Under the pieces are notes generated by a model. The model did not search any database and was not told where the DNA came from. It saw only the letters and a program-made list of their open reading frames with translations. A stretch of 64,000 nt of DNA, taken from IMG/VR virus record IMGVR_UViG_3300027754_000034, positions 1 through 64,000 of that record. One strand, written 5' to 3'. Of the stretch, positions 1 through 64,000 are shown in pieces (within the stretch, counting starts at the first letter, position 1; every line of letters begins with the position of its first letter). A program made the position numbers and the translations under genes.

Positions 1-2140
<2,140 letters not shown>

Positions 2141-44628: not shown

Positions 44629-44644
44629 TGTATATTTAATATGT
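44613..44644 (+). repeat. End X, copy 1 (32-bp direct repeat)
   Basis: gcgcttaactttttagtgtatatttaatatgt, identical to 46556-46587; contains the last codons and stop of the collar gene, a TATATT box and ATG. Confidence 0.95.
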
Positions 44645-47812: not shown

Positions 47813-50374
47813 ATGATGGGCGGTTATGAGAATTTAGGGCCAATCATAAGCCAAAACCCCCAGGCGGTAACGCCTGGGGGCGGTAGTTATTCAGCTGATG
47901 AGAGATCATATGATTCCGTAGTATTCCAGCAGAATCATCCGCCAATGGACTGGGAGATGAATCTCATCCAGTCTGTGGTCGGCAATGCTGGTCTTAGAAA
48001 TCTAGCTTCTAAATTATTCAGCAGTACGTTCATATCCGGAAACGTATTAGAATCAAATGCTCCAGGAGCATTTTACGAATTTTTACCAGCAGTAGCTGGT
48101 AATGAAAACATTATTAGATTTTCGGCTTGTGATTTATTAGTAAACGGTTGGGCTCTTCGTTTAGAATATTCAAATACTGATGTCGATGGTAAGAACTTAG
48201 TTCAATTAACTGCTCCACCATTAACCGGTATTAGGCAGGATCTTCTAATATTAGAAGTATGGAGAGCACTGCTTTCTCCTCTCCCTTCTGTAGATAACAA
48301 GAGTCTGGGTGGCTTGATACTACGAAATGGTAATGCCAATGCTCCTGATACAGTAAACTTATCGGATGACCTAATAGACCCGAATTATCTAGCAGAGACA
48401 TCTAGAAGAGTTCAGATTCAGTATAGGATTCGCATCATAGAATCGGTAGACATTCTTTCCTATCCTGACGGCTTGGGCGATCCATCAATTACTGCACATA
48501 CGGTTCCATATCTTGGCGGTTCTGATGTAAATGGAAATGATTTGCCTGCGTACGTCTACACTGCCGTAGCTGGAGACTCAGGATTATGGCGTTCCGGGGC
48601 TGGAGACGCTGCTTCAGCCACTGATATAGGGTCAGTCGATGGCTATATATGTTCATTACCATTGTGTGTCGTAGTCAGACGTAATTCCGACACTTGGGAC
48701 AAAACCACAAATCTCAATGGTGGGGTATTAATCGGTGGAGTCAGTCCTCGACCAGACGGTTTATTTTCTGATCAGATAGCCTCGGGGGACCTAATAGATC
48801 TGAGAAAATATACTGCCTGGAATGCACAAGAATTCAAGAATGATGCTGTCGATGCATTAATGCAGAATTCCTTGTCCACCCAATATGAAGAATCTGCCTT
48901 GGGAACTGGCGGAAACACCTTCCTGATGAAGGATCCGATAGGTACTTCTTCACATATTTGGAATGCGGATGGTGTTAGAACCTCATATTCAGATAAACCA
49001 GTGGTTCATCCAATTGCGTTGTCATTTACTATTCCAATGGCAACCAATACACTGACTTGTGATCTCACTATAAATGTTGATTTGCCATGGGCTTCAGGTA
49101 TCAATATACTGGCAAATGCTCCTGCAGGAACCAATTTACTTAGCATTAGTAAATGCTTCATAAATGATGGCGTAGGAAACATTTATGATGCTTTTGATTC
49201 TTCCGTAGCCTATCACATATTAAACATAGTTTATTCTATTTCGGGAACGGAAATCGATACAGCCACCATAGAATTTAACCAAAATATTCCTGTCGGGACT
49301 GTTTTTTTAGAAGCTTTGGTAGAATATCCACCAAATGTGGGCCTTTCTAGAAATGTCATCTCAATAGATAAGGTCTGGGTTCCTAATAATTTTGATGCTT
49401 GGGTAGATACCTCGGAATTCACTGCCACATCAGATGCGGATCGTAGTAGCATAAATACTTCTTTTAATATTGATTTAGTAAATAGACAGGTTACGTTCGC
49501 TTATCCCTCGAATCTCATAAGCGATACGTTTTATAACCACACTCTCTCTCAATTCATGATCCCCGACTGTGTCGATGCAAGCAGCGTTGTGATTACAGGT
49601 AAAGCAGTGGTTGGGATTGAATATAATGCTGGTTGCACAGTCATAGAGTTTAATCCCCCTGAAATGGCTCTTGGTGTTGGACTAGCTGTCGATTATGTGG
49701 CTTATCGTCCACCAGTCCCATTAGGAATGGTGCCTTATGACTCTATCGATGTTTTTTATCAAACTCGATCGATTCAATCGATACCAGTTCCAGTAGGAAT
49801 GTATTCCCCATCATTTTATCGGCGTACAGATATTGAAAGAGTGTTCTTCATATCTTCCGGGTCTGGATCCTACGATTCAGCAGAATATGATGCTTCTACG
49901 CAATTAGCGATACCAAGACTTCCAATAGTCGATTATTCCGACAGTTTATTCTCTGGATACCATGAGTCTTCTGTCGTAACAAACGGTAATGATAATGGGA
50001 TCAGTGAAGTCTTAGTGACTGAGAAATCCTATTTGGCTTCTGACGGCTTTTATCTTTCTACCGCAGGTGGAACTACACAAGATGCTGATGGTAGGAATTA
50101 CTGGCCTTACTCGCCCAATATAATATTAAAAGCATTTAATGCTACTGATTTCAACATAAGCACTCGTCGTAAATTAGCTAGTGATTTCGTCTTGGAGCTT
50201 AAGGAAGATTTCCCATCACTTGGAAGGAAAGGAAGTCTTTATCTGGCTATGGCTACGGGTTATTCATATAACTCTCGCATAAATAAAATACATACTTCAG
50301 ATTCAGTAGAACTTGACGGAGTTTCCCTCTTCAGATTAAGGGGAAACCCACTTTATTATCGGAGGTCCTCTTGA
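47813..50374 (+). CDS. Tail fibre/baseplate anchor protein, paralog A
   Basis: YDSVVFQQNHPPMDWEMNL (DUF4815/DUF6519-like N-terminus), LEVW, ETSRRVQIQYRIR, GLWRSG, RPDGLFSDQI...DLIDLR. Confidence 0.7.
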   Translation: MMGGYENLGPIISQNPQAVTPGGGSYSADERSYDSVVFQQNHPPMDWEMNLIQSVVGNAGLRNLASKLFSSTFISGNVLESNAPGAFYEFLPAVAGNENIIRFSACDLLVNGWALRLEYSNTDVDGKNLVQLTAPPLTGIRQDLLILEVWRALLSPLPSVDNKSLGGLILRNGNANAPDTVNLSDDLIDPNYLAETSRRVQIQYRIRIIESVDILSYPDGLGDPSITAHTVPYLGGSDVNGNDLPAYVYTAVAGDSGLWRSGAGDAASATDIGSVDGYICSLPLCVVVRRNSDTWDKTTNLNGGVLIGGVSPRPDGLFSDQIASGDLIDLRKYTAWNAQEFKNDAVDALMQNSLSTQYEESALGTGGNTFLMKDPIGTSSHIWNADGVRTSYSDKPVVHPIALSFTIPMATNTLTCDLTINVDLPWASGINILANAPAGTNLLSISKCFINDGVGNIYDAFDSSVAYHILNIVYSISGTEIDTATIEFNQNIPVGTVFLEALVEYPPNVGLSRNVISIDKVWVPNNFDAWVDTSEFTATSDADRSSINTSFNIDLVNRQVTFAYPSNLISDTFYNHTLSQFMIPDCVDASSVVITGKAVVGIEYNAGCTVIEFNPPEMALGVGLAVDYVAYRPPVPLGMVPYDSIDVFYQTRSIQSIPVPVGMYSPSFYRRTDIERVFFISSGSGSYDSAEYDASTQLAIPRLPIVDYSDSLFSGYHESSVVTNGNDNGISEVLVTEKSYLASDGFYLSTAGGTTQDADGRNYWPYSPNIILKAFNATDFNISTRRKLASDFVLELKEDFPSLGRKGSLYLAMATGYSYNSRINKIHTSDSVELDGVSLFRLRGNPLYYRRSS

Positions 50375-51083: not shown

Positions 51084-54000
51084 ATGCCCATTAATCCACT
51101 CGGAGCCGGAGTAAGCAGATACATTAATGATAGAGACCGGCAGTATGCTGCTGTAGTTTTTCAGGTTGGTAAGCCACCCCTGGATTCTGAATTAAATTTA
51201 ATATCTCTCATTGATTTAGAGTCCAAAGCTGAGGAAGCACGCAGCCGCGTGGCATCCGGCTGGCTGATGAATGAAATAAACCCTTATGCTGATTTCTTAA
51301 CCCGGCCAGAATTTTCGAATCAGTTTTATTTCGGTAATAACTTCGCTGGAGAGTCCCGCAATATCACTTGGGCCATAGTAAATGGATGGCCCATACCTGT
51401 AGCAGGTACCAAAACGGGCGCTCCTCCATTAGCTGCTAATAATGTCGACTATTGGAATCGAATTACCCTAAACCCTCCATCCACTTCTACTGGCGGCAAT
51501 AGAGCAGAATTTGCTTTTCTAGAAGTTTGGCTTCAGCGTGTTGATGTAGACCCAGCAGCACCAGCAATTGCTCCTGGAAAACCGCTACGTGGTTATATAT
51601 ATAAATTTGGCAATGTAGAGGGTGGATTTTCCCCACTGCCAGATGAATTGGTAGACCCCGACATTAATTTTGAGACCACCAAGCGTGTTCAAATACAATA
51701 CAGAATCCGCGTTGTTGCTGATATTAATTTAGTATCCAATCCCGAGGGATTCGATCCTACATTAGTGTTTGCTCAGGGTAGCCTTTCAGGCCCGTCAGTC
51801 GTTCCATTCTCCAATATGCGAGAAGCCTTAGGCGACCCAGGATTGTGGCGTGCTGGAACCGGCGACCCAACTACTTTCGGAACTGCAGATGGGTTCGTAT
51901 ATGCTATACCGATTTGTGGTGTTTTTAGAAGAAATGCTGCGGGATTCAGCGACGTCGGTAACTTAGCTGGTTCATTTAATAGAAATTCAAAGGCTTTAAC
52001 GCGGGTGAATGCACTCACATTTACCGCTCCCATCGCCTTGCAAGCTAGTTTATCCTCTTTCGCTACTAGCTTTTCCATAGCCAGCATATCCGGAACTCCT
52101 CTAGATACCTTGACCTCATTTGGTGAGGCATACTTTAGAATAGATGATGAGATAGTAAGAGTCACCAGCGTAATTCAGATATCAGCCATAAATTATACAA
52201 TCAATATTGAAAGAGGGCAACTTAATACAATAGCACGCTCACATTTATTCGGGACCGAGTTATTTATATATACTGTTCGGCCAGACGGGTTGTTTGCGGA
52301 TCAGGTGTCCAATACTGATATTTTAGACTTGCGTCACTCAATAGCTGATAAATTTGATTATGATAGCATACTTCAATCTAACGTCGTAGAATTACTCAAA
52401 GGAAACCTACGAAGTACCTGGAAGAGGTACGGCACAACCAACACTGCTGGTCCAGTAATCCTATATGGTGATAGAATCACAGATTCTTCAATATTTACGG
52501 GCGGTCTTACTAGACTAGATGCTCCAGATGGTAATCGCAGAGCATACTCAGATGCCTCTGTAATGCAAAAATTCGTATTACCCGTCACAGTTCCTAGCAA
52601 TTCCCTCACACTAGGGAATAATATCCAGACCACTGTCAGTCCATATACTGGGACAGTAGTATGGTCCGGATCAGCTCCCGCTCACCCAACTGGTAGCCGA
52701 CTTAACGGTACTTACCCAACTTGGTGGAACGGCGACCAAATCACGGTAAACATACTTCCATTCCAAAATGGTGTTTCGATTGCTGATGCAAATCAGATAA
52801 GATTTATTACCCCATCAGAATTATCGGATTCTATCCTCGTTAGATTCGAGGGAATGACATCTGATCCTAACGGGGGTGATCCACTAGAATTACCCCCAAC
52901 CGCTCCAACAGCTTCGGACCCTTATTTAAACATCCCGATTTCTGGTCAAAGAATACTTAGAAACGGACAAGGAATCAGTGTAGTCGTTGATGGTTCCGGT
53001 AATCTAGTGATTACTTTAGCTAGCGGCGCTATCGATTCTGAATTCCAAGAATTCGTAGATGCTATTCAGGGAGAAACCGATCCAGGTCGAGTATCTCAGT
53101 ACAAGATGTATGTGGAGTTTACTGTTCTATATGGAACTGGTCGTGGTCTATCTCACCGACCCGACTGGATCCATATGGTCCAGTATAGAGGAACCCCGAC
53201 TAACGTAACAAAGACTCTACGTCGTAGTGGTCTTTCTACACTGTCGCCAATGGTACCTACCTACATAGGCGATTCTCCATTAGTTCAGACCGGAAACGAT
53301 CGTAATTTAGCCAAAACGTCGGAGGTCATGTTTGATCCCGGCTCTAAAACTGTTTACGTCGCTCCATACAGAATGCTGACCATTCCTCCTCTGGTTGCCA
53401 GGAATGGTGCTCTACTAAATTGGTATAATGGTGGAGCGAACACCCAAGGCTCAATGCCGCAATTAGACCAGGATGGCGTGAATACCGTTCATCCTGTTGT
53501 TGATCCCCTTACACTCTTCTTCACGGGGTCTGTTACTAAGTATGTCGAATTACCATTCCAGTACTTACCAAAACCAGGATTTCATTATGTTCCAATAGTT
53601 CCGATTACTGATTTGGTATATTCATCAGGTATCAATTTCCTAATGAAGTCGAGCCAGGGAGTTGTAGGAAATACTCCGGACTATAACCGAAATTATGTCT
53701 CCTACCCAGCCAATACCCCCGGTTACTATATAGTGACACCGGAAGTAGGAGAAGTGTATGGAAATAGCAACGGTAATAAATCCATATACGGTGAAAAGAT
53801 AACGATAGAAAAGGTAACAGGTAGAGAGGGACAGGCTTTTAAGGGAATCAAATTTCCACCCTTCTTAGGACCGGCAAGAATTACTGGCATTTATCTCAGA
53901 AGTGGTCTTGATGTCTCTCCCGCTTCCACTCCCTTTAATAATGACCGAATATTTATTGGTGGGATAGGGACAGACGTCAATCTTCTGCGAGACAGCTTCG

Positions 54001-55715
54001 ACGGACCAACGTTCCTCTTGGACGTTGATACGAACGGGGATCTATACTTTGTATTAAATGCCGAGGTTATAGACTTCAAGAGAGCTCCTGCAGGAACCAC
54101 TTTTGATAACGCACAATTCCTGGTCGAATGCACTTTGTTTTCTTATGACCGAGGATTCCTCCAGACAAATGGTCGCATTCTTTGCGCTAGAACGCTAGGA
54201 TCATCTGTAGCTCAGACTATTCCGGGATGGGACGGTTATTTATCTACGAACTTTAGCGTTTCCACGTTAGGTTTAATAGTCCCTGCTCCTTTGAGTGATA
54301 TCGCGAGTAACAACGAGGTAACTCTATACTACTCTCGGTCTCCATATCAGGGAGACCCATTCGGCACCCAGACAGCGTATTCCGATGATCCTTATAGACT
54401 CGGACCTCTGACTACTGGAGAGGCTTTAACTCTTCATAATAGTCCTCTTGGTCCTGTTCAAACACTAACTCTTCCCAATAAGGGGAATTTCGAAATATTA
54501 AGCTCTGTACGATTCGTGACTAGTCTTGGAACTGGTCGACTTTCGGGAGCGAATCCAATACCACTGCTTCTTCCCAGCGAGTCACCACTAAATCCTCCTG
54601 ACTACGCAGGAACTCTAGTGGACCAGACTAGAGAATATTCATTAAATCGAGTCGGCTATGACGACTGGTTTACTTCGAAATGGCCGTCAGATCCATCCTC
54701 ATTATCCACTAGGCCCCCTACGGTTCCGGGGGCTATTTCAGAACGTTTCGATAATGATATACATCCGGAATTTGCAGGGTGTGTTTCTAATTTACCTCTT
54801 GGTGCTTATTTTAGAGATAAGGACTTCGTAGGTAAAACTCTTTATCAAATGCGAACAGCAAGTAATATCGGCGGAAATCCCGTTGGTACACTCACCTTCA
54901 CCAATTATGAAGCGTCAATGGTTAAGGGCGTTGACGGTAGGTCTACCTGGCAAGGTCGAGATTATCTTTGCGGTAATAGTAGTAGTACATCAGGGTTCGG
55001 CACAGAATCATTAGCAAGAGTTGATGGAACCTATAATCTAGGTGATACCAAGGTCTTTAAGACCACTCGTGGCGGGGCTGCTTATTCCACCACTGGTCCT
55101 TGGCCTGGTGGAATACTAACTGGTTCATTCATCAAGACAAGACCAAATTCCGATGTTGGTGCAGTCTTACTTTGCAATGCCTATCTCGTAAGATCTCATC
55201 CTGAACAGTCACAGGGTGTAGAACTTCATCCCGGCAATGAACTACAAATGATACTGGTAACGCAGGCCGTTCCGGCTTATTTGCGGGACAATGAAATAGT
55301 TCATTCAGCTAGCGGAATCAGTGAGGGATATACTGCAGTAGAAAGATATAGGTTATTGGGGAAGCCTTTAGAAAAGCGGAGAGGCAGACTACCTAATGAC
55401 GTTTTGCCAGCAGGCAAGCCCTTGTACGGAAATAATACTTCGTTGCTGTTCGGTTCAGCTGATCCACCATTGGTGGCTGCAATACAAGAATCGATAGCTG
55501 TACTGGTTGACCTTCAAACAGTATTTGATTTATCGAAGAAGCCTGCAGACCCCTCCACAGTACAGATGTTCGTAAATGGAGTTAAACTCCAATACGGAAT
55601 AGATTATACCGTGGGTGGCGTTGATGATAAGGTCGTTACATATAGTCCTAGCCCTCCCGTTAGACCGGAATTATTAACCACTGATCTTGTGGAATTCTGG
55701 TATTTGGCTATCTAG
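51084..55715 (+). CDS. Tail fibre/baseplate anchor protein, paralog B (1543 aa)
   Basis: YAAVVFQVGKPPLDSELNL, LEVW, ETTKRVQIQYRIR, GLWRAG, RPDGLFADQV...DILDLR; C-terminal MFVNGVKLQYGIDYTV module. Confidence 0.75.
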   Translation: MPINPLGAGVSRYINDRDRQYAAVVFQVGKPPLDSELNLISLIDLESKAEEARSRVASGWLMNEINPYADFLTRPEFSNQFYFGNNFAGESRNITWAIVNGWPIPVAGTKTGAPPLAANNVDYWNRITLNPPSTSTGGNRAEFAFLEVWLQRVDVDPAAPAIAPGKPLRGYIYKFGNVEGGFSPLPDELVDPDINFETTKRVQIQYRIRVVADINLVSNPEGFDPTLVFAQGSLSGPSVVPFSNMREALGDPGLWRAGTGDPTTFGTADGFVYAIPICGVFRRNAAGFSDVGNLAGSFNRNSKALTRVNALTFTAPIALQASLSSFATSFSIASISGTPLDTLTSFGEAYFRIDDEIVRVTSVIQISAINYTINIERGQLNTIARSHLFGTELFIYTVRPDGLFADQVSNTDILDLRHSIADKFDYDSILQSNVVELLKGNLRSTWKRYGTTNTAGPVILYGDRITDSSIFTGGLTRLDAPDGNRRAYSDASVMQKFVLPVTVPSNSLTLGNNIQTTVSPYTGTVVWSGSAPAHPTGSRLNGTYPTWWNGDQITVNILPFQNGVSIADANQIRFITPSELSDSILVRFEGMTSDPNGGDPLELPPTAPTASDPYLNIPISGQRILRNGQGISVVVDGSGNLVITLASGAIDSEFQEFVDAIQGETDPGRVSQYKMYVEFTVLYGTGRGLSHRPDWIHMVQYRGTPTNVTKTLRRSGLSTLSPMVPTYIGDSPLVQTGNDRNLAKTSEVMFDPGSKTVYVAPYRMLTIPPLVARNGALLNWYNGGANTQGSMPQLDQDGVNTVHPVVDPLTLFFTGSVTKYVELPFQYLPKPGFHYVPIVPITDLVYSSGINFLMKSSQGVVGNTPDYNRNYVSYPANTPGYYIVTPEVGEVYGNSNGNKSIYGEKITIEKVTGREGQAFKGIKFPPFLGPARITGIYLRSGLDVSPASTPFNNDRIFIGGIGTDVNLLRDSFDGPTFLLDVDTNGDLYFVLNAEVIDFKRAPAGTTFDNAQFLVECTLFSYDRGFLQTNGRILCARTLGSSVAQTIPGWDGYLSTNFSVSTLGLIVPAPLSDIASNNEVTLYYSRSPYQGDPFGTQTAYSDDPYRLGPLTTGEALTLHNSPLGPVQTLTLPNKGNFEILSSVRFVTSLGTGRLSGANPIPLLLPSESPLNPPDYAGTLVDQTREYSLNRVGYDDWFTSKWPSDPSSLSTRPPTVPGAISERFDNDIHPEFAGCVSNLPLGAYFRDKDFVGKTLYQMRTASNIGGNPVGTLTFTNYEASMVKGVDGRSTWQGRDYLCGNSSSTSGFGTESLARVDGTYNLGDTKVFKTTRGGAAYSTTGPWPGGILTGSFIKTRPNSDVGAVLLCNAYLVRSHPEQSQGVELHPGNELQMILVTQAVPAYLRDNEIVHSASGISEGYTAVERYRLLGKPLEKRRGRLPNDVLPAGKPLYGNNTSLLFGSADPPLVAAIQESIAVLVDLQTVFDLSKKPADPSTVQMFVNGVKLQYGIDYTVGGVDDKVVTYSPSPPVRPELLTTDLVEFWYLAI

Positions 55716-55732
55716 TCGTCAGGCTTCTTTTG

Positions 55733-55770
55733 AGCTATCAATAGTGGTTATCTGACCACTATTGATAGCT
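55733..55770. promoter_or_regulatory. Perfect 16-bp hairpin upstream of the tailspike genes
   Basis: agctatcaatagtggt-tatctg-accactattgatagct, followed by tatattt. Confidence 0.8.
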
Positions 55771-55793
55771 TATATTTAGAGTTTAATGGGGTT

Positions 55794-55865
55794 TAAAACT
55801 AAATGACTCGTCCTCGTTCGCAACAGATCAACGATCCCGTTACACGTTATTCGAAGATCCCCTTA
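55794..55865 (+). repeat. 72-bp perfect direct repeat, copy 1 (leader plus first 21 codons of tailspike 1)
   Basis: Identical to 60808-60879; near-identity extends to about 100 bp. Confidence 0.96.
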
Positions 55866-58800
55866 CATGATAACCCCATATCAGGGTCAAGCTCTACCCT
55901 GATAACGGGGTCTGCTTATAATGACTTCTTAGATAAGTCCATATTAAAATTCACAGGAGGCGTTGAGGTACCGTGCCCAGCAGTTCTTATAGCTTCTTTG
56001 GCGGATCCTTATTTACTAGTTGCGGGAAACTCATTTAAGGTCTCTGTTAATTTAAATCAAGCTGTAGAAATTAAAATCACTGCTGCACAATTGGTGGTTC
56101 TTGGTGCCAGTAGTTTCGCTACCGTAGACAGGGTAATCACCCTGATAAATAGCACATTATCTTCGGTAAATATAACTTGGGCAAACGTAGCTGATGTTAC
56201 TGACTCCGGTTATTTAAGATTAACAAGTCCGACTTCGGGTTCCTCATCATCTATTTCAATATCAGGGCTTCCAGCCACATTACAAAAATTAGGTTTCGGG
56301 AACGTAGCCACATCCATATCCTACGGTAAGGATGTTTCACGGGGAATAGTTACCGTTGAACCGGATTCGTTCGGTGGGTACGCTCAAGCAGTATGGGAAG
56401 ACGGTAGCCCATTAAACGCCATATCGAATACCTTTTATTTCAACAATTCATCAGCTTACGGTTTATCGCAGAAAGTACCGACTGGACAACCTGTATATGG
56501 TAGAATTTCCGAAACCACGGCTCCTTCGTTAGAAATAAACTGGTATAGCAAATGTGAAGGATCAAACCCAGTAGTTTCCAAAAACCCATCATTCAGTTCG
56601 TTGGGTGCTGGCGAAACTTTAGTATTTTCCTCATATGATTTATATGGCAACTCCAGCAATAGCTTTACGGCTACATTTAGTGCTGGACCAACTTCTCTAC
56701 AAGATGTTATAAACGTAATAAATAATGCGTGGAACAGCATAACTGGTGGTCTTCAAGGCAGAGTTATAAGTCGAGTAACTTCCCCTTATTTCGTTGTTGG
56801 ATCGTTATATTTTAAATTAAATAATAACGCGACCATTACCGCAAATTTTGATGGAACAGAAAAAACTGCCACTTTAATAATAGCCAGAATCAACACTGCT
56901 GTCGCTGCGGCCATGCAGTCGTCCCAAGGAGAAGCTTATGTGATAGGCTCCGACTCTTTTGGTATTAGATCTAAAACTGGTTTCGGGGAATCAAGTTCAG
57001 TAGAAATATTAGGATTTAGTAGTTCTGATACCGAGAGGTGTCTTGGATGTCCTGTCGGTATATATAAAGGGTGGGAATTCTGTAAAGCCCGTGGTTCAAA
57101 TATACAGTTATCTGCGGCTTCCCCGACTTCTTATTACATAATTGGTGCGGGTTCTACAGCTCTAACCTTTTTAGGTTTATCTCATTACAGCACGGGCGTC
57201 AAGACCTCAATATTAAACAGATATATTAGAACAGAATTTCCTTCATATGATTCAACTATCGTACCTTTAAATTTCGCGGTCACTCTTTTAACACCAGAAT
57301 ATCTAGAGGCTGGAGATGTTCCTGATGACATCTTCACTAAGGAACGATTTACAGATTTAGTATCCTCTAATGCCTATAAATATCCGTTAGCCTCAAGCAA
57401 CACAAATGCAGCACGAGCAGGACAACAAGCCAGATATGGCCTAGACGGTTACATTCAAGCTGCAACTCTGCCTTATGAATTAGGAAGCGTTAAAGCGGGA
57501 AATGTTTATTTTCCATTAAATGGTGCTGTTTTATCTTTTCAATATACACTAAATTCGCAAGACTTAATATTCGAGGGCTTCCATCCTTTAAACCCTTCAA
57601 TTCGTCTTTATATTCACGATGACCAGACTGGTAGACCTGCTTGGTGTACATCAGTCAATGCTGTAAAGACGAATGTAAACGCATACACCCCAGATTTACC
57701 GGCTGAAGCCTCTTCAATCGTAGACCTTAGCGAAGAGGGGATTAGTATTAGCTTCCGAGATGCAAACAGTGCTACTCCGTATGTTCCAGAAAATGACTTT
57801 TCTTTCGCTCCATCAAGTTCTCCATCATTTGTAAAGGAGTTGTCCTTTTCTAAAAATACTTTCATTAATTTTAAACTTGGATCTGCAGCAATTAGTGATA
57901 AAAATATTTCAGATAATACTACAATAAATTTTTATAAGTTCACAAGTCCTGCTGGGAGCAACCAAGGAGACTCCGCTTTAAGACTTAACAGCAGGATAGT
58001 GGAAGACAAGACAATATTTCAGTCTATTAATGGACGCATTGAAATTTCATGTGGCGACGGCATCAGTACCTTTGGAGATTTTAACGGGATTGACGCTATA
58101 TGGAAAATATGTTCCATACTTTCGGTCCTACCAGCTTCGGATACACGACCAGTCTTCATCGCATTAAAGTCCGGTACTTACCATAATGATAATGCAAAAC
58201 CTTTAGTATTTTCGAATAGAAATGTTACAATCATAGGAGAGGGTGACGTAAACATAATTACACCTTCCCCATCAGATGACGGTACCATTACCTTTAATGG
58301 TACCGTAGACCCATCTTCAATTTCAAATCATATAAAATTAGAAAATATTAGGATATTTGCTAATATTTTTAGAGCAATAGAATGTGAGAATGTTACCATA
58401 GAATTAATAAACTGTTATATTGAAGGCTTGGGATTGTCTATCAGGGCAACGAGCACATCGGGTTCCTCCACATATTCCAATGGTGCTGCAGCCTACGTCA
58501 GGCAATGCACCATCGCTCATTCAAGTGTTAAAGATACCAATAGTTTAGTATACCTTAAATCATTAAATGATGACTCTCCTCCTGTCGTGTTCGACTCTTG
58601 TGTTTTTGACTGTAGCAACTGTATTGATTTTACCGTTCTTTTGGTAGAAGGACTATCAAAGAGAAATTCATATGAGGAGGTCTCGTTTAAAAATTCATCC
58701 TTTAAATTAGGAAAATATACGACACCAACAGTCGCATCAGTTCCTCCTTACACTCTTCCGAATTTAAATCATGATAACGGGTTATTAGCTCTACATCCCG

Positions 58801-60788
58801 CTAATGATGGTAGGACTGCAGAAGGTCTTATAATCGAATCAGTAATTTTTGAAGACTGCAGTATAGAAAACGCAGTGCAAGACTCCATTATTCTGCAGTT
58901 ATGTAGTGCTAGTGTTTCTCAATATGCTGCTGAATTTGCATCACCAAACAATTGGGGTCAGGTTAACAACCTCACCTTCAGTCGATGTAATTTTAACGTT
59001 TTATTCGGTGAAGAAACCCCGTATTCAACTATCGCAAAGTTCATAGTGGGGCAAGGAGTTCTCAATACAGTTCTAGATTCTTGTAATTTATATCTTAAAA
59101 CACAAAATGCAGTATTGGGGATGTCCGGTCAGTTACCCGACTGGTTTAAGTTTGTGAATCCTTCTGGTTATCGTGATATTGATTTAAACGCCACGAGTCT
59201 AATTTCTTTCAGCACGATGTTTGCCTTTGGTGGTAATAATACCAGAGTCATAAACACGAATTTTAATGATATATTTAGTAAATTCGGATTAACTGGAGTG
59301 TCCACCGTTATTTATGGTCTTTCTCTCGATTCTTTCATTGTAGAAAATTGCAGGATCTTAGGAACTGATGAACAAAGCGGTAATGGGGTTGAAGATTCTA
59401 CCAATATTTTCATAATAAATGAAGACCCATCTTCCCCATCATTTCTATCCAGAAGGGCCGTATCTATTTCAGGTTTAGACATAGTAGGAAAAAATCTCAC
59501 GAACGGGTACGAATGGAATAAAGAGTATGGATCAATTTGCAGTTTCATAGGGAATAATTTTAATATCGATAAATGTAGGATTGAAGGATGGACTAATACT
59601 CTTAGTCCTGTTTTGAAAAGTCGCACATATGGAATAAAGTTCAACGGTCATAATTATAAAATACTTAATTGTACAATTGCAGATACACAATGGGGTATAT
59701 ATAACATAAGCTTCGAGTATACCCCATTATTTGCTGAATGGGGAAATTATGTGATTTCGAACAATACGATAAGAGTGGGTGATTACCAACCAGCAGCTGA
59801 ACTGTCTTCTGGAATATACTTAACTAATAGCGGTTTCGCACCCACGTCGGATCCTATCATTATCAGTAACAATAACGTCAGTACAGGATACTGCACAGAT
59901 ATAATAGATGCTGCCATAGACTGCATGATAACCCCAGAAGATGCTAGTATATTAGATGATTCGCCTCTACTACACATACACGACAACACCATTAAAATAA
60001 GTACCGATTTAAAAAACGCAATATCTATTTTACCATCCGCTTTGGAAACAAGTCCTGGAGACATTCACAATCCCAAAGCAATAGTGTATGGTAATACCGG
60101 ACAAAAAATACAAGACTTGTCGATACTTACACCATTTTGTTATTTAGCGAATTATACTGCCGGTACTGGATATACGGCGATAAATCATAATAACGTACTA
60201 CCAGGCAGTTTAATAGGTGCAGAAACCGATACTAGCATAGTAGAATTTTTTCCAAAGCGCACATCCACTCCACTTAGTACTTATATTAATCCAGTTAGGT
60301 CGAGCAATCCAATTCATGTAGTTAATCTTCCCGATATTTGGAAACTGAACTTGAATATTAGTCTTACCGTAGAACATCAGGGTATAAACGGTCTGTGGAC
60401 AGCCCCTCCCGTTTTTTATATCATGACTACTAGAATAGTCTATTCGTATGACAATATAACTTACATAGACCTCCCTGATTCAGAAGTGAGTTCTTCGTAC
60501 TTTGAGGTTACGTCAATCATAGATCCTGGAATAGTTGATACATATATTTCTCCATTAACTCTGACTGGAGAGTTACCAAATGTCTCAACTTTCCATGATG
60601 GAGTTTTTTTTGATGTAGAAGCCGCTTTCTTAATACTCCCTCCGATCTCGCCTCTTGCGCCTTCTCCAATTCCATCTAATGCTTTTAACTTGGAGTTAAG
60701 GTGGTCAGCATCCGTTAAAACTCCCAAAAAAGATTATTTAGACGGTGCCATCATGTTAAACAACACTCTTCGACTAAAAACAGTCTGA
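55803..60788 (+). CDS. Tailspike / receptor-binding protein 1 with parallel beta-helix (pectin lyase-like) region
   Basis: ISCGDGISTFGDFNGIDAI...IALKSGTY...NVTIIGEG cap followed by Asn/Cys-ladder repeats (IELINCYI, VVFDSCVF, VISNNTI, IISNNNV). Confidence 0.8.
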   Translation: MTRPRSQQINDPVTRYSKIPLHDNPISGSSSTLITGSAYNDFLDKSILKFTGGVEVPCPAVLIASLADPYLLVAGNSFKVSVNLNQAVEIKITAAQLVVLGASSFATVDRVITLINSTLSSVNITWANVADVTDSGYLRLTSPTSGSSSSISISGLPATLQKLGFGNVATSISYGKDVSRGIVTVEPDSFGGYAQAVWEDGSPLNAISNTFYFNNSSAYGLSQKVPTGQPVYGRISETTAPSLEINWYSKCEGSNPVVSKNPSFSSLGAGETLVFSSYDLYGNSSNSFTATFSAGPTSLQDVINVINNAWNSITGGLQGRVISRVTSPYFVVGSLYFKLNNNATITANFDGTEKTATLIIARINTAVAAAMQSSQGEAYVIGSDSFGIRSKTGFGESSSVEILGFSSSDTERCLGCPVGIYKGWEFCKARGSNIQLSAASPTSYYIIGAGSTALTFLGLSHYSTGVKTSILNRYIRTEFPSYDSTIVPLNFAVTLLTPEYLEAGDVPDDIFTKERFTDLVSSNAYKYPLASSNTNAARAGQQARYGLDGYIQAATLPYELGSVKAGNVYFPLNGAVLSFQYTLNSQDLIFEGFHPLNPSIRLYIHDDQTGRPAWCTSVNAVKTNVNAYTPDLPAEASSIVDLSEEGISISFRDANSATPYVPENDFSFAPSSSPSFVKELSFSKNTFINFKLGSAAISDKNISDNTTINFYKFTSPAGSNQGDSALRLNSRIVEDKTIFQSINGRIEISCGDGISTFGDFNGIDAIWKICSILSVLPASDTRPVFIALKSGTYHNDNAKPLVFSNRNVTIIGEGDVNIITPSPSDDGTITFNGTVDPSSISNHIKLENIRIFANIFRAIECENVTIELINCYIEGLGLSIRATSTSGSSTYSNGAAAYVRQCTIAHSSVKDTNSLVYLKSLNDDSPPVVFDSCVFDCSNCIDFTVLLVEGLSKRNSYEEVSFKNSSFKLGKYTTPTVASVPPYTLPNLNHDNGLLALHPANDGRTAEGLIIESVIFEDCSIENAVQDSIILQLCSASVSQYAAEFASPNNWGQVNNLTFSRCNFNVLFGEETPYSTIAKFIVGQGVLNTVLDSCNLYLKTQNAVLGMSGQLPDWFKFVNPSGYRDIDLNATSLISFSTMFAFGGNNTRVINTNFNDIFSKFGLTGVSTVIYGLSLDSFIVENCRILGTDEQSGNGVEDSTNIFIINEDPSSPSFLSRRAVSISGLDIVGKNLTNGYEWNKEYGSICSFIGNNFNIDKCRIEGWTNTLSPVLKSRTYGIKFNGHNYKILNCTIADTQWGIYNISFEYTPLFAEWGNYVISNNTIRVGDYQPAAELSSGIYLTNSGFAPTSDPIIISNNNVSTGYCTDIIDAAIDCMITPEDASILDDSPLLHIHDNTIKISTDLKNAISILPSALETSPGDIHNPKAIVYGNTGQKIQDLSILTPFCYLANYTAGTGYTAINHNNVLPGSLIGAETDTSIVEFFPKRTSTPLSTYINPVRSSNPIHVVNLPDIWKLNLNISLTVEHQGINGLWTAPPVFYIMTTRIVYSYDNITYIDLPDSEVSSSYFEVTSIIDPGIVDTYISPLTLTGELPNVSTFHDGVFFDVEAAFLILPPISPLAPSPIPSNAFNLELRWSASVKTPKKDYLDGAIMLNNTLRLKTV

Positions 60789-60807
60789 TTGCATTTTCTA
60801 TGGGGTA

Positions 60808-60879
60808 TAAAACTAAATGACTCGTCCTCGTTCGCAACAGATCAACGATCCCGTTACACGTTATTCGAAGATCCCCTTA
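60808..60879 (+). repeat. 72-bp perfect direct repeat, copy 2
   Basis: Identical to 55794-55865. Confidence 0.96.
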
Positions 60880-63800
60880 TATGATAACCCCGCATCAGGA
60901 AGCTTTTCTGCGATTATATCTGGAGCCCAATACACCAGCTCCATAAACGAGTCTGCTACTAAATTAACGAATGGTGTAGAAGATCCTTGTCCGGCCAGTA
61001 TCGTTGGTTCAGCTACGGATCCTTTCTTTTTGGCTATTGGAAATAAATTTCTAGTATCCATTGATAACGCTATCCCGGTAGAAATAACGGTAACTGCAAC
61101 CGAAATAGTGAATTTAACCGGTGTTGGAGATTTCACTACAGCCCATAGACTGGCGAAACTTGTAAACGATACTCTGTTAGTTGAAAATCCTGATTGGTAT
61201 GCTGTAGCGAGCCGAACTCCGGAGGGTTTTCTAAAATTAGCGTCACCTACGTTTGGTTCAGACTCTAGAGTAGAAATATCTGGAAACAATGCAATACTGA
61301 CGGCTATCGGCTTTCCGATGGCAAATCCTCGGGTAAGCCTTGGCCGGGATATCACAAGAGGAATTGTTACCCAAAGCCCAGATAGGAAAGGCGGCTATCT
61401 CGATTTAGCTTGGGAGGATGGGAGACATGTAACTGCCATCAATAATGTTTATTATACTAATGCTGATGCAGACAAACCATTTGTACAATCCATACCGACA
61501 GGTCAACCAATATTTGGTCGGTTATCGAAAACCGATTTACCGTCCTTAAACATTGATTGGTATTCAAAGTGTGAAGGTTCAGACCCACTTCGCTCAGCAT
61601 TTTCCGATTTCTCTTTATTGGGCGGTGGTGAGGACATAGAAATCTCCTACACCGACATTTACGGAAACACCAATTGCCAGTTTACCACTATATTTAGTAC
61701 TACTCCTACTACTTTTCAGGATGTAGCTGATGAGATAAATAACTCCTGGAATGTGGTTTCCAGGGGCCTAAGAGCCACAGTCATATCTGTGGTAGTGGCT
61801 CCATATATAGTATTCACTAATTTGACGTTAAAACTGAATGGTAATGCTCAAATAGTAGTTACATTAAATGGAACTCAAAAGACTGTCAGTCAAATAATCA
61901 CTCACATAAACAACGAAATTGCTGCCGCTGGACAAGCGGCGCAAGGTGAGGCTTTCAACGCTGGCGGTGGAAGATTTGGGATTCGGTCTTTATCTGCGGC
62001 TGTCGGTGAAACATCTACCATAGAAATAATCAGTACTAGTGATTTCGATGGGGAAAGAACCCTAGGACTTCCCATTGGTCTATATAAGGGCTGGGAACTG
62101 TGTAGAGTCGTTGGTGCAGAAATACAAATAGACCCGCCATCACCATCCGTTATATATGAAATATCGGCTGGAGGTACGGCCATTCTTCCGTTAGGTCTTA
62201 CTTCTTATCCAGTTAGTCCTATTAAGACTACTATTGTCAACAGATTCATAAAGTCAGAGTTTCCTTATTACGATTCGAAAGTACCTAGCACTAATGCTAT
62301 TTCTATACTAATTCCGGAATTAATGGAAGCCGGAGATATTCCGGATAATATTTTTACTAAAGAACGTTTTGCTGATCTTGTATCACCTAATTCTTATAAA
62401 TACCCCCTTGCTGTAGATAACACGAATGCTGCTAGATTCGGGCAACAAGCCCGTTATGGCCTAGACGGTTATATTCAACCTGAGACTCTTCCCTATGACC
62501 TAGGAAGCGTAAAGGTAGGGAAGTTCATATTTAATATAAATAGCGCTTCTTTATTGATGTTCGAATATACAAAAAATGGTCAGGATCTATTCATAGAGGC
62601 TTTTAATGCAGGAAATCCTTCAGTACGTCATTATGTAATTGACGATCAAGCTGAAAATCCTGGTTATTTAATAACTGTAAATGTAGAGAAAACCGCAGCG
62701 AACACTTACACACCAGATGTAGACCCTGACCCTTCCACCATCCTAGAACTTTCGGATAGATTCTTGGGTTATAGCATCAGGAATATTAATTCTGGAGCTT
62801 ATACACTAGGTGTCCATGACTTTACACTGTTAGGAGACATAACCTCTGACTCTAGAACTCTTCAATTCGGATTAGCGACTTTATTATACTGGAAAACAGG
62901 TCCGGCAAATATTTTTGATGAAAACATATTTAATACCCCGGGCGCAGATATAGTTAAGTTTACTAGTCCCTTAGCAGATAATGAAGGTGACAGTGCGATC
63001 CGCCTCGCAGATAAGATTACCTCTAATAGTACGATATTTTCAATACTTAATGCTAGATTAGAAGTCACATGTGGTGATGGAATAAATTCATATGGAGATT
63101 TCAACGGTTCTGACGCCATTTTTAAAGCTTGGCAGTATTTACATAATGATCCCGCAGATGAAAGACCTGTCGTAATCAAGATTAAAGAAGGCACATATAC
63201 TAATGCTGTTACTCTGACATTCACACGCAGTGTGACTATTGAAGGAATAGCTAAGGATAAAGTATCCATAAATCGCACTACTCCAGGGGCTACTTTAAGA
63301 TTCTTTAATACTCCAACGAACGCAAAGACTGACGTTATCTTAAGAAACCTATCCATTCTTAGTAACGAAAATTTTTGCATTTATAGTCGCGCAAATTTAC
63401 TGGTAGAAAACTGCTATCTAAATAATATAGCTATATTCGGTAATCAAGAAAATGTAATGTCCTCCTACTTAGCTCGATTCAGTAATTGTGAAATAGGTGC
63501 TTCCTCCGGTCTAAATATTCATCACAATATACATTTAATTTACGAAAATGACCCTTTACTACCTGAAAAGATTCCGCTTCCTCCAGTAGTATTCGATAAC
63601 TGTCTGATAAATAATAGTGATACCATTGATATAGGACTACTTAGAATTGACGGATCGTTTGACTATTCTGAGTTTTCAGGTGTTTATTTTGATAAATGCG
63701 TAATACGACTTGGAACCTATAGTAATGTTATTGCGCCTGACGGCATAAATACGAAAGGATTTAGAACTGAATATAATACTGGCCTAGTCGAACTACATCC

Positions 63801-64000
63801 CAAAACAGACGTCAGGACTGGTCCAGGGTTAGTAATTCATGAACTCAGATATGATAAGTGCCGTATAGAAGCATTAGATCAAAAATCTTTGATAATACAA
63901 CTTACTGGGGATATAACCAGTAAAGAGCATGCAGATTATGCATCTCCTTCTGATTGGGGTAAAATTGAAAATTTGACATTTGATGGTACTGAAGTATATG
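60817..64000 (+). CDS. Tailspike / receptor-binding protein 2, paralog of the preceding gene; truncated by the window end
   Basis: Manual translation from ATG 60817 is stop-free to 64000 (1061 codons): MTRPRSQQINDPVTRYSKIPLYDNP...WYSKCEGSDP...QQARYGLDGYIQ...VTCGDGINSYGDFNGSDAI...IKEGTY; collinear with tailspike 1. Confidence 0.9.
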   Translation, partial: MTRPRSQQINDPVTRYSKIPLYDNPASGSFSAIISGAQYTSSINESATKLTNGVEDPCPASIVGSATDPFFLAIGNKFLVSIDNAIPVEITVTATEIVNLTGVGDFTTAHRLAKLVNDTLLVENPDWYAVASRTPEGFLKLASPTFGSDSRVEISGNNAILTAIGFPMANPRVSLGRDITRGIVTQSPDRKGGYLDLAWEDGRHVTAINNVYYTNADADKPFVQSIPTGQPIFGRLSKTDLPSLNIDWYSKCEGSDPLRSAFSDFSLLGGGEDIEISYTDIYGNTNCQFTTIFSTTPTTFQDVADEINNSWNVVSRGLRATVISVVVAPYIVFTNLTLKLNGNAQIVVTLNGTQKTVSQIITHINNEIAAAGQAAQGEAFNAGGGRFGIRSLSAAVGETSTIEIISTSDFDGERTLGLPIGLYKGWELCRVVGAEIQIDPPSPSVIYEISAGGTAILPLGLTSYPVSPIKTTIVNRFIKSEFPYYDSKVPSTNAISILIPELMEAGDIPDNIFTKERFADLVSPNSYKYPLAVDNTNAARFGQQARYGLDGYIQPETLPYDLGSVKVGKFIFNINSASLLMFEYTKNGQDLFIEAFNAGNPSVRHYVIDDQAENPGYLITVNVEKTAANTYTPDVDPDPSTILELSDRFLGYSIRNINSGAYTLGVHDFTLLGDITSDSRTLQFGLATLLYWKTGPANIFDENIFNTPGADIVKFTSPLADNEGDSAIRLADKITSNSTIFSILNARLEVTCGDGINSYGDFNGSDAIFKAWQYLHNDPADERPVVIKIKEGTYTNAVTLTFTRSVTIEGIAKDKVSINRTTPGATLRFFNTPTNAKTDVILRNLSILSNENFCIYSRANLLVENCYLNNIAIFGNQENVMSSYLARFSNCEIGASSGLNIHHNIHLIYENDPLLPEKIPLPPVVFDNCLINNSDTIDIGLLRIDGSFDYSEFSGVYFDKCVIRLGTYSNVIAPDGINTKGFRTEYNTGLVELHPKTDVRTGPGLVIHELRYDKCRIEALDQKSLIIQLTGDITSKEHADYASPSDWGKIENLTFDGTEVY

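What the first reader, a model, noticed from the sequence alone, without database searches (positions are those of the whole stretch)
55786..60900. Tandem tailspikes with a perfectly identical 72-bp start: built-in recombination handle for receptor switching
Seen: 55794-55865 equals 60808-60879 with no silent changes, whereas other conserved protein motifs of the two genes (e.g. QQARYGLDGYIQ) carry several silent differences and much of the protein has diverged. The repeats bracket tailspike 1 exactly (5014-bp spacing), so one crossover deletes or duplicates a whole gene and leaves an intact in-frame gene behind the hairpin-containing leader. Inference: an accordion or cassette-exchange mechanism for host range. 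The identical N-terminal peptide may also compete for one baseplate socket.
Basis: partly seen in the sequence, partly recalled or inferred. Interest (0 to 1): 0.75.

Follow-up and report, generated by a model that had tools for sequence, protein, structure and literature searches.

The report
Converted 5' end of twin tailspikes
Two old, strongly diverged tandem copies of a tailspike-like gene in a huge freshwater phage share a really identical 72-base start, most likely a recent patch of gene conversion over the conserved N-terminal anchor peptide and not a purpose-built switch for host range.

Summary
Window 55794-55865 equals 60808-60879 exactly, at 5014 nt spacing. It lies inside a 100-nt tract that is 96% identical, running from 17 nt before each ATG through codon 27. 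The genes are T1 (55803-60788, 1661 aa) and T2 (60817 to 65793, beyond the window, 1658 aa). They are 38-40% identical. Synonymous sites are saturated everywhere (pS about 0.75) except codons 1-27 (pS 0).

Both proteins have a conserved N-terminal module of about 740 aa and a tailspike-like beta-helix. The locus follows baseplate genes in a phage of about 430 kb.

Relatives encode the same N-terminal peptide with many silent differences. Four other tandem pairs in related phages lack any identical 5' tract; three were compared as DNA, one only as protein. The identity is therefore neither protein constraint nor a family design.

It is best read as a recent short gene conversion between old paralogs. 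The phage encodes a RecA-like recombinase.

Copy number is 1 or 2 among relatives, so duplication and loss do occur over evolutionary time. Three near-identical assemblies and a strain about 7% diverged all keep the T1-T2 junction, and no deletion junction was seen. A crossover at the repeat could only remove or amplify T1, never T2.

This is an ordinary mechanism in an uncharacterised family.

The parts
51084..55715 (+). gC, a 1543-aa conserved structural protein directly upstream of T1. It is a candidate partner or neighbour of the tailspike-like proteins.
   Evidence: It has a weak PHROG tail-protein hit. It is 56-71% identical in all relatives and always sits immediately before the T gene or genes. 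An Atlas lead points to viral DUF4815 proteins, with a score below the tool's 0.9 mark. Its N-terminus is paralogous to that of gA, 47813-50374.
55731..55772 (+). A 19-pair hairpin with a 4-nt loop, followed by TATATTTAG. It is terminator-like or regulatory and lies between gC and T1. It is absent before T2.
   Evidence: The fold has z = -7.0. Relatives L004 and L008 have a perfect hairpin at the same place with unrelated stem sequences, followed by the same T-rich motif.
55786..55885 (+). Copy 1 of the 100-nt tract (96% identical to copy 2). It holds the ribosome-binding region, the ATG and codons 1-27 of T1.
   Evidence: The 4 mismatches are one in the spacer (55793) and three in codons 22 and 26, all changing the amino acid (H/Y, I/A). 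There are no silent differences.
55794..55865 (+). Copy 1 of the exact 72-mer: 9 nt of leader plus codons 1-21, MTRPRSQQINDPVTRYSKIPL.
   Evidence: In a k=31 assembly it forms a separate node with depth 35.5, against 13.8-15.9 in the flanks.
55803..60788 (+). T1, a 1661-aa tailspike-like protein. It has an N-terminal signature peptide, a conserved N-terminal module (to about aa 745), a right-handed beta-helix (about aa 785-1460) and a C-terminal beta-sandwich.
   Evidence: ORF. Models were made. The best Foldseek matches are HK620, Sf6, Det7, Klebsiella, Acinetobacter and cyanophage Pam1 tailspikes. There is a weak pectate-lyase/pectinesterase signal in the family. The N-module has FliD/flagellin D2-D3-like domains.
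57289..57534 (+). The most conserved internal block of T1 (PE..EAGD.PD.IFTKERF ... QQARYGLDGYIQ). It pairs with 62309-62554 in T2 at 71% nt identity.
   Evidence: It is 80% identical as protein, but only 20 of 40 degenerate codons are the same. This is the internal control showing that protein constraint does not give nucleotide identity. The monomer model has low pLDDT here.
60789..60816 (+). The 28-nt T1-T2 spacer. Its first 11 nt (ttgcattttct) are unique, and its last 17 nt belong to the repeat tract.
   Evidence: The unique junction sequence is present in three assemblies. It is also spanned by a contig of a strain about 7% diverged (record 11).
60800..60899 (+). Copy 2 of the 100-nt tract.
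60808..60879 (+). Copy 2 of the exact 72-mer.
60817..64000 (+). T2, the 1658-aa paralog of T1. It runs past the window end to 65793 in the full record and is followed at 65806 by an SNF2-type helicase gene.
   Evidence: 38% identity over the full length. The flanking helicase is seen.

Best explanation
T1 and T2 are an old tandem duplicate pair of a fast-evolving tailspike-like receptor-binding protein of a huge myovirus. Its conserved relatives reach 427-436 kb.

The first 12-16 residues form a signature conserved across the whole family. It is probably the part that fixes the protein to the virion. Strong protein constraint there keeps the two 5' ends the most alike at the DNA level.

A recent, short, non-reciprocal homologous recombination event (gene conversion) copied about 72-100 nt from one gene onto the other. 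The tract runs from 17 nt before the ATG to about codon 27. The upstream limit is where homology between the duplicated units ends. The event probably occurred during the recombination-rich replication of a phage that carries its own RecA/UvsX-like recombinase. This erased all silent differences in the tract, while the rest of the genes stay saturated.

The resulting 72-nt direct repeat is a by-product. It can support occasional unequal crossovers that delete or amplify the T1 body. Nothing shows that this is used or selected.

Shown: the identity and its sharp boundary; saturation elsewhere; the fold; family-wide conservation of the peptide with free synonymous variation; variable copy number among relatives; absence of such a tract in other tandem pairs.

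Inferred: the conversion event itself; the anchor role of the peptide; the role of the phage recombinase.
For: 1. There is a step from pS = 0 (codons 1-27) to pS about 0.75 from codon 28 on. dS is saturated in every 100-codon window. Same-codon frequency is 0.42-0.44 against 0.39 expected at saturation.
2. Orthologs in five related phages encode MTRPRSQQINDP with many synonymous differences. The DNA identity is therefore not required by the peptide or by a family-wide RNA or DNA element.
3. A natural control exists. The tandem pair in IMGVR_UViG_3300037851_001277 has the same 16-aa start in both copies with 6 silent differences in 48 nt. Pairs in L024 and L018 have longest identical runs of 7 and 15 nt. 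The pair P0005/P0013 differs at residues 13 and 19.
4. In the N-terminal module, in-genome copies are each other's nearest relatives in four lineages, with support 100, 92 and 99 and one near-sister pair. This fits lineage-specific duplication and/or concerted evolution.
5. The 100-nt tract has no RNA structure beyond shuffles, z = -0.2 and +0.8.
6. A RecA-family recombinase gene is present at 94439-95755 of the record, 150 bits. Another paralog family in the same genome also shares 215-306 nt of 5' sequence at 90-97%.
7. A strain about 7% diverged already has the T1 body, the T1-T2 junction and T2. The arrangement is therefore older than that split, whereas a tract with no differences is probably younger.
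Against: The event itself is not observed, and a single genome cannot give its direction or date.

The two copies could not be read in the diverged strain, so concerted evolution is not shown directly.

The only coding differences inside the 100-nt tract change amino acids, at residues 22 and 26. One of them needs two base changes. This fits a tract of only about 72 nt, or a mosaic repair, better than one clean 100-nt event.

The depth of the T1 body unitig is 13.8, against 15.3 and 15.9 in the flanks. The 72-mer node is at 35.5, against about 30 expected. Neither value is explained, and they leave room for minor rearranged genomes.
Confidence: 0.68

Rival explanations
1. The repeat is a selected recombination handle. 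Recombination between the two 72-mers regularly produces subpopulations without T1 or with several T1 copies, as an accordion or bet-hedging on host range, and selection maintains the identity for this purpose.
For: The repeats are in register and bracket exactly one gene unit. At 72 nt the repeat is the longest dispersed exact repeat in the record. The phage has its own RecA-like recombinase. Copy number is 1 or 2 among relatives. The T1 body has about 10% lower depth than its flanks in one run, which is a weak hint within noise.
Against: No other tandem pair in the family has such a tract. The arrangement is the same in three assemblies with 3-4 SNPs per 25 kb and in a strain about 7% diverged, with no deletion joint among contigs. 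The geometry allows only loss or amplification of T1, never of T2. Selection for future recombination is a weak force compared with a simple recent conversion.
Confidence: 0.12
2. The tract is the scar of a cassette replacement. After a recent duplication, or in an existing pair, the body of one copy from about codon 28 onward was replaced by recombination with a co-infecting relative. The crossover lay in the conserved 5' end.
For: There is a sharp breakpoint at codon 27/28. In the beta-helix half, T1 and T2 are no closer to each other than to other phages' proteins, 28-31% identity in an unresolved star. Exchange of receptor-binding modules behind a conserved anchor is well documented for tailspikes (PMC10408124, PMC10684548).
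Against: In the N-terminal 740 aa downstream of the tract, T1 and T2 are still sisters with 95-100 support but are deeply diverged. The donor would therefore have to be an unsampled close relative. The known relatives share no long exact runs with the handle. The diverged strain already has both bodies and the junction, so a tract dating from the origin of the arrangement should have gathered a few silent differences. Monophyly of the C-terminal halves is not rejected.
Confidence: 0.08
3. The identity is kept by selection on the nucleic acid itself. The tract would be a shared translation-initiation region, an operator for a translational regulator, or a promoter-proximal element that sets equal expression of both genes.
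For: The identity starts in the non-coding ribosome-binding region, 17 nt before the ATG, and covers the start of the coding region, where such elements lie. All differences inside the 100-nt tract change the protein and none is silent.
Against: There is no stable or unusual RNA fold. The tract is much longer than typical operators. Orthologs and the three other tandem pairs compared as DNA show free silent variation at the same positions. There is no Rfam-type or promoter evidence (one search is at chance level).
Confidence: 0.07
4. It is an assembly artefact. Two strain variants of one gene were stitched in tandem, or the identity was created by the assembler.
For: The source is a metagenome, and repeats shorter than the read length are classic places for mis-joins.
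Against: The T1-T2 junction contains unique sequence that exists in three assemblies and in a diverged strain's contig. An independent k=31 assembly gives the 72-mer at about double depth, with flanking unitigs ending 30 nt into it. Tandem pairs of this gene occur in four other phages.
Confidence: 0.03

Closest known systems
Modular tailspikes and tail fibres with a conserved N-terminal anchor and an exchangeable receptor-binding part. Examples are Ackermannviridae (Kuttervirus/CBA120-type) multi-tailspike phages, Klebsiella dual-RBP phages and P22/HK620/Sf6 tailspikes (PMC10408124, PMC11414711, PMC10684548).
   Same: There are several tailspike-like genes side by side. The N-terminus is conserved and the beta-helix body diverges fast. 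Sequence similarity between the genes of one phage has been proposed to aid recombination between them (PMC10408124, discussion). The fold of the C-terminal half matches these proteins.
   Different: There is no sequence homology to those anchors: no Pfam or PHROG hit. The N-terminal module is about 740 aa, with FliD/flagellin-like domains. The host and virion are unknown. Here the two copies share the same anchor, whereas the Ackermannviridae complex is branched and uses different anchor domains. That comparison rests on general knowledge of that system.
Recombination between short conserved motifs in T-even distal tail fibre genes (the 'His boxes' of genes 37/38, Tetart and colleagues 1998; recalled from memory, not read here).
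   Same: Short conserved stretches inside otherwise diverged adhesin genes act as crossover points. The phage has a RecA/UvsX-type recombinase.
   Different: Those motifs are shared between different phages and swap adhesin specificity between genomes. Here the identical stretch is shared only within one genome and is not conserved at the DNA level among known relatives.
Tandem paralog clusters diversified by homologous recombination at a conserved segment: the Staphylococcus aureus lpl cluster (Tsuru and Kobayashi 2008, PMC2568036).
   Same: Tandem paralogs hold a highly conserved nucleotide segment inside variable genes. That segment is the site of unequal recombination that changes copy number and shuffles parts.
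   Different: In lpl the conserved segment is central, is present in every copy in many strains, and rearrangements between strains are documented. Here there is one pair, the segment is at the very 5' end, and no rearranged variant has been seen.
Concerted evolution or gene conversion of duplicated genes in general.
   Same: There is a sharp island of zero synonymous divergence in otherwise saturated paralogs.
   Different: Nothing differs in principle. This is the textbook signature on a small scale (72-100 nt).

Membership tests
Phage tailspike / beta-helix receptor-binding protein | Right-handed parallel beta-helix body of the pectate-lyase type | tested here: met
   The AlphaFold2 model of T1 aa 720-1661 has pLDDT 73.5 and pTM 0.72 and is a long run of short strands. 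The top 50 Foldseek PDB matches are dominated by tailspikes (HK620, Sf6, Det7, Kp32gp38, APK09, Fri1, Pam1), with probability up to 1.00 but low TM (0.15-0.27) because of length. One relative matches PF12708 at 7e-6, and the family profile matches pectinesterase 1xg2 at E 0.004.
Phage tailspike / beta-helix receptor-binding protein | Encoded with tail or baseplate genes of a tailed phage | tested here: met
   A baseplate wedge gp6-like gene lies at 29731-33183. gC upstream has a weak tail-protein hit. The locus order is conserved in all relatives. However, the locus borders the replication module (helicase, DnaB).
Phage tailspike / beta-helix receptor-binding protein | Homotrimer in the virion with glycan-binding or depolymerase activity | not testable with these tools
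   No oligomer model or biochemical data exist. The conserved block aa 504-577 has low monomer pLDDT. That would fit an oligomer interface but does not show one.
Phage tailspike / beta-helix receptor-binding protein | N-terminal part that anchors the protein to the tail | tested here: inconclusive
   The signature M-[TV]-[QR]-P-R-x-x-Q occurs at residue 1 in 113 of 125 full-length family representatives. Residues 1-14 are unstructured in the monomer model. The complex prediction with the C-terminal third of gC gave no answer.
Gene conversion tract between paralogs | A local island of near-zero synonymous divergence with sharp edges in otherwise diverged paralogs | tested here: met
   pS is 0 over 18.8 synonymous sites against 0.75 elsewhere, with a step at codon 28. 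P is about 3e-8 to 6e-10.
Gene conversion tract between paralogs | The identity is not explained by constraint on the sequence: orthologs vary at the same sites | tested here: met
   Five orthologs and three other tandem pairs show silent variation at the same codons.
Gene conversion tract between paralogs | Within-genome copies are identical to each other but differ between closely related genomes (concerted evolution) | not tested
   The only strain-level relative, run X2 at about 92-93% identity, is covered at 3-4x.
Programmed host-range switch (invertible or shufflon-type, DGR, or accordion) | Dedicated machinery (invertase or recombinase sites, reverse transcriptase with template repeat) or documented alternative forms in a population | tested here: not met
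   The repeats are direct, not inverted. The only other T1/T2 repeat (57289-57534 / 62309-62554, 71%) is ordinary protein conservation. No alternative junction appears in contigs of two runs or in three assemblies. Read-level minor forms could not be examined.

The most novel reading that the evidence does not exclude
The 72-nt repeat is functionally exploited. In natural populations of this huge phage, RecA-type recombination at the repeat continually generates a measurable minority of genomes that have dropped T1 or carry extra T1 copies. Repeated conversion of the anchor-coding 5' end keeps the handle intact. The result would be a copy-number 'accordion' for one of two receptor-binding proteins, without any dedicated recombinase.
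Probability: 0.12. Interest if true: 0.6.

Novelty: new member of a known kind. Interest (0 to 1): 0.3.

Why it matters
If the reading here is right, this is a clean small example of gene conversion between tandem receptor-binding-protein genes in an uncultured freshwater phage of about 430 kb.

It also defines a large, unannotated family. The N-module profile finds 969 representatives at E <= 1e-3. Members share a fixed N-terminal signature peptide, a module of about 740 aa and a variable tailspike-like body. They are always encoded after one highly conserved 1550-aa protein.

That is useful for annotating huge phages and for finding their host-recognition genes. It does not reveal a new mechanism.

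It would matter more if read-level data showed that the repeat drives frequent gain and loss of one tailspike in nature.

Tried and rejected
- Pfam and PHROGs on T1, gA and gB gave no hits. gC gave only one weak PHROG tail-protein hit.
- RNA structure in the tract: none.
- Sigma-70 promoter and terminator scans were at chance level. The motif CTTCTTTTATATTTAG, shared by two relatives' leaders, does not recur in the window.
- A search of IMG/VR for any DNA encoding MTRPRSQQINDPVTRY found only a 99.985% identical copy of the same phage. No intermediate relatives are available there.
- Homolog searches with T1 and T2 found nothing closer than 38%.
- Contigs of public runs laid on the region show presence and topology only. 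Minor junctions cannot be seen, and the listing of differences for the diverged strain was cut before the tract.
- AU tests on the C-terminal half neither support nor reject separate histories of T1 and T2.
- The complex prediction of the T N-terminus with gC aa 1000-1543 gave no answer, neither for nor against.
- A DGR reading of the internal 246-nt repeat was considered and dropped. That repeat is an ordinary conserved protein block with mixed substitutions.
- Assembly artefact was considered and judged unlikely (see rivals).

Full report
THE OBSERVATION

The window is bases 1-64000 of a 257,205-nt IMG/VR record (Ga0209596_1000003). The record is linear and about 60% complete.

Two long ORFs lie head to tail. 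T1 is 55803-60788 (1661 aa). T2 starts at 60817 and ends at 65793 in the full record (1658 aa).

Bases 55794-55865 and 60808-60879 are identical (72 nt, 5014 nt apart). They are the only two copies in the record. They sit inside a 100-nt tract, 55786-55885 / 60800-60899, with four mismatches. The tract begins 17 nt before each ATG, so it includes the ribosome-binding region. It ends after codon 27.

Upstream of the tract the two contexts are unrelated. Before T1 lies the gC stop, a strong hairpin (55731-55772) and a T-rich stretch. Before T2 lie the T1 stop and 11 unique bases.

IS IT MORE THAN CHANCE OR PROTEIN CONSTRAINT?

T1 and T2 align end to end at 38-40% amino-acid identity.

- At positions where both have the same degenerate amino acid, the codon is the same in 42% of cases outside the tract. 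Complete randomisation under these genes' codon usage predicts 39%.
- In the first 21 codons, 20 of 20 degenerate codons are the same (P about 3e-8 to 6e-10).
- Nei-Gojobori pS is 0 over 18.8 synonymous sites in codons 1-27. It is 0.82 in the next 50 codons and 0.75 over the rest. It is 0.72 even in the best conserved protein block.
- The next longest identical run is 17 nt.
- The four differences in the 100-nt tract are one in the spacer and three in codons 22 (H/Y) and 26 (I/A). None is silent.

IS THE ARRANGEMENT REAL?

Three JGI assemblies carry the same 25-kb region with 3-4 SNPs, none in the repeats, and with the same T1-T2 order. They are 3300009181 (227.8 kb), 3300010885 (126.9 kb) and 3300027754 (257.2 kb). 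How independent the samples are is not known to me.

Logan's k=31 contigs of a freshwater run (X1, possibly the source sample) give:
- a contig ending at 55823, depth 15.3;
- a 72-nt contig that is exactly the repeat, depth 35.5;
- a 5002-nt contig covering 55836-60837, depth 13.8;
- a contig starting at 60850, depth 15.9.

This is the graph expected for a true exact two-copy repeat.

A second run from another study (X2) holds a strain about 7% diverged. It has pieces of the T1 body, a contig spanning the T1 end into T2 (60405-61067) and further T2 sequence. No contig joins the leader directly to the T2 body. Contigs cannot show minor forms.

The slightly lower depth of the T1 body and the slight excess on the 72-mer node are unexplained. 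I treat them as noise.

WHAT THE GENES ARE

T1 has no Pfam or PHROG match.

A model of aa 720-1661 (pLDDT 73.5, pTM 0.72) is a long beta-helix ending in a beta-sandwich. Its Foldseek matches are dominated by phage tailspikes and depolymerases: HK620, Sf6, Det7, Klebsiella and Acinetobacter phages, and cyanophage Pam1. One relative hits PF12708, and the family profile weakly hits a pectinesterase. Language-model neighbours are viral beta-helix clusters.

A model of aa 1-760 (pLDDT 74) shows a string of small alpha/beta domains resembling FliD/flagellin D2-D3 domains. Confidence is low for residues 1-14 and 504-577.

The window also holds a gp6-like baseplate wedge gene at 29731-33183.

'Tailspike-like receptor-binding protein of a myovirus' is therefore supported at the level of fold and context. 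It is not supported by function.

THE FAMILY AND THE LOCUS

Relatives were found as proteins and as loci. They include genomes of 308, 427 and 436 kb.

The locus is conserved. The order is an approximately 860-aa protein, an approximately 215-aa protein, the approximately 1550-aa gC, one or two T genes, sometimes small genes, then an SNF2 helicase and DnaB.

gC is 71% identical to its nearest relatives and at least 56% across the set. T is only 33-38% and 22-28%. T is thus the fast-evolving gene next to a conserved one.

A profile of the N-terminal module finds 969 representatives at E <= 1e-3, and 139 at 1e-30. Lengths run from about 850 to about 1660 aa, and the module always starts at residue 1.

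Of 125 full-length representatives, 113 begin with M-[TV]-[QR]-P-R-[KS]-[EQ]-Q-[IV]. Only T1 and T2 carry it in this record.

The N-terminal peptide is therefore under strong family-wide protein constraint. The most plausible reason is attachment to a conserved virion partner. That role is an inference: a complex prediction with the last third of gC gave no answer.

WHY GENE CONVERSION

Orthologs from five related phages encode MTRPRSQQINDP with different codons for T, R, P, S, Q, I, N and P. Neither the peptide nor a family-wide nucleic-acid element requires this DNA sequence.

Four other phages have tandem T pairs.
- L024/L025: longest identical run 7 nt.
- L018/L028: longest identical run 15 nt.
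- P0005 + P0013: no DNA held, and the proteins differ at residues 13 and 19.
- IMGVR_UViG_3300037851_001277: the two copies start with the same 16 residues but differ at 6 silent sites in 48 nt.

The last case is a natural control. It shows what constraint alone produces.

The tract has no RNA structure beyond shuffled controls.

What remains is a recent copying of 72-100 nt from one paralog onto the other. The phage has a RecA-family recombinase gene. Another paralog family elsewhere in the genome also shares 215-306 nt of 5' sequence at 90-97%. Homologous exchange between paralogs seems to be at work in this genome.

HISTORY OF THE PAIR

In trees of the whole protein and of the N-terminal module, T1 and T2 are sisters (support 100). 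The same holds for L018a/b (99-100) and P0005/P0013 (92). L024a/b are near-sisters.

By region, T1-T2 sisterhood holds for aa 22-760 (support 95-99). In the beta-helix half the clade is an unresolved star. There T1 and T2 are 28-31% identical, no closer than to other phages' proteins. Monophyly is neither supported nor rejected.

This fits several lineage-specific duplications, or older duplication with occasional homogenisation of the N-terminal half. In either case the receptor-binding half diverges fast.

Copy number therefore changes over evolutionary time.

Because the diverged strain already has both bodies and the junction, the arrangement is older than that split. A tract with no differences is probably younger. 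With about 24 free sites and about 7% strain divergence a few differences would be expected, so this is a weak argument.

WHAT THE REPEAT CAN AND CANNOT DO

By geometry, a crossover between the two 72-mers within a genome deletes the T1 body and leaves T2 intact behind the T1 leader. An unequal crossover between genomes gives that deletion plus a genome with two T1 bodies. T2 can never be lost this way and a T1-only phage cannot arise, so this is not a two-way switch.

With a phage recombinase such events must happen at some low rate. Nothing shows that they are frequent or selected.

As a handle for exchange with other phages it is poor. The known relatives share no long exact runs with it.

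COMPARISON WITH WHAT IS KNOWN

The closest known cases are:
- tailspike systems with a conserved N-terminal anchor and an exchangeable body, where similarity between the tailspike genes of one phage has been proposed to aid recombination (PMC10408124, PMC11414711, PMC10684548);
- recombination at short conserved motifs in T-even fibre genes (from memory);
- tandem paralog clusters that rearrange at a conserved segment (PMC2568036).

The present case works like these in principle, and the protein family itself is undescribed. I file it as a new member of a known kind.

VERDICT

Observation confirmed. Interpretation partly supported. The best explanation is a recent short gene-conversion tract over the anchor-coding 5' end of an old tandem pair, with confidence about 0.68.

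Rivals:
- an actively used handle (0.12);
- the scar of a cassette replacement (0.08);
- a nucleotide-level regulatory element (0.07);
- an assembly artefact (0.03).

The decisive tests are read-level junction counts and the two 5' ends in strain-level relatives.

Noticed in passing
window 55731-55772; L004 about 9906-9939; L008 about 7403-7446: A perfect 15-19-pair hairpin with a 4-nt loop lies between gC and the first T gene in three related phages. The stem sequences are completely different and each is followed by TATATTT. This is a structure-conserved terminator or regulator. In the window the motif CTTCTTTT lies before the hairpin, whereas in the relatives it lies after it.
   Followed up: partly
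window 47813-50374 and 51084-55715: gA (853 aa) and gC (1543 aa) share an N-terminal region of about 280 aa at 31% identity, plus a second stretch. They form a second, much older paralog pair in the same module. gC is unusually conserved for such a large phage protein (71% to its nearest relatives).
   Followed up: partly
window 1-397 and 423-1077: The contig starts with 2.6 copies of a 153-nt tandem repeat (96%). This is followed by a degenerate 27-nt (9-codon) array. Read on the minus strand, the array looks like Gly-X-Y collagen-like repeats.
   Followed up: no
window 44643-46541: A 632-aa ORF combines HNH-endonuclease-like and Mom-like DNA-modification matches (PHROGs). Relatives carry a Mom-family gene and HU-like genes at the same place, just before the gA-gC-T module.
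   Followed up: no
G000 record 115138-115710 (+), 177266-178174 (+), 253667-254320 (-), outside the window: Three dispersed genes begin with nearly the same 70-100 residues (MNPVNAS.MMKRMAAALAASKSPNK...). They share 215-306 nt of 5' sequence at 90-97%, next to pentapeptide-like repeats. This is another case of paralogs with homogenised 5' ends in this genome.
   Followed up: partly
G000 record 94439-95755 (-), outside the window: This is a RecA/UvsX-family recombinase gene (PF00154, 150 bits).
   Followed up: partly
Relatives: the P0005 contig and L009 18932-21748: In some relatives the SNF2 helicase and DnaB genes next to the T locus carry intein/LAGLIDADG insertions (1037-aa helicase; 801- and 938-aa DnaB). 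In the window's phage they do not.
   Followed up: no
window 55794-55865, run X1: The 72-mer node has depth 35.5. The sum of its two contexts is about 29-31, and the T1 body is at 13.8 against 15.3 and 15.9 in the flanks. The cause could be noise, a second strain sharing the 72-mer, or minor rearranged genomes. It is unexplained.
   Followed up: partly
T1 aa 504-577 (window 57312-57533) and the same block in T2: The most conserved internal block of the family (PE.MEAGD.PD ... ARYG.DG) is predicted with very low confidence in the monomer model. It may be an oligomer or partner interface.
   Followed up: no
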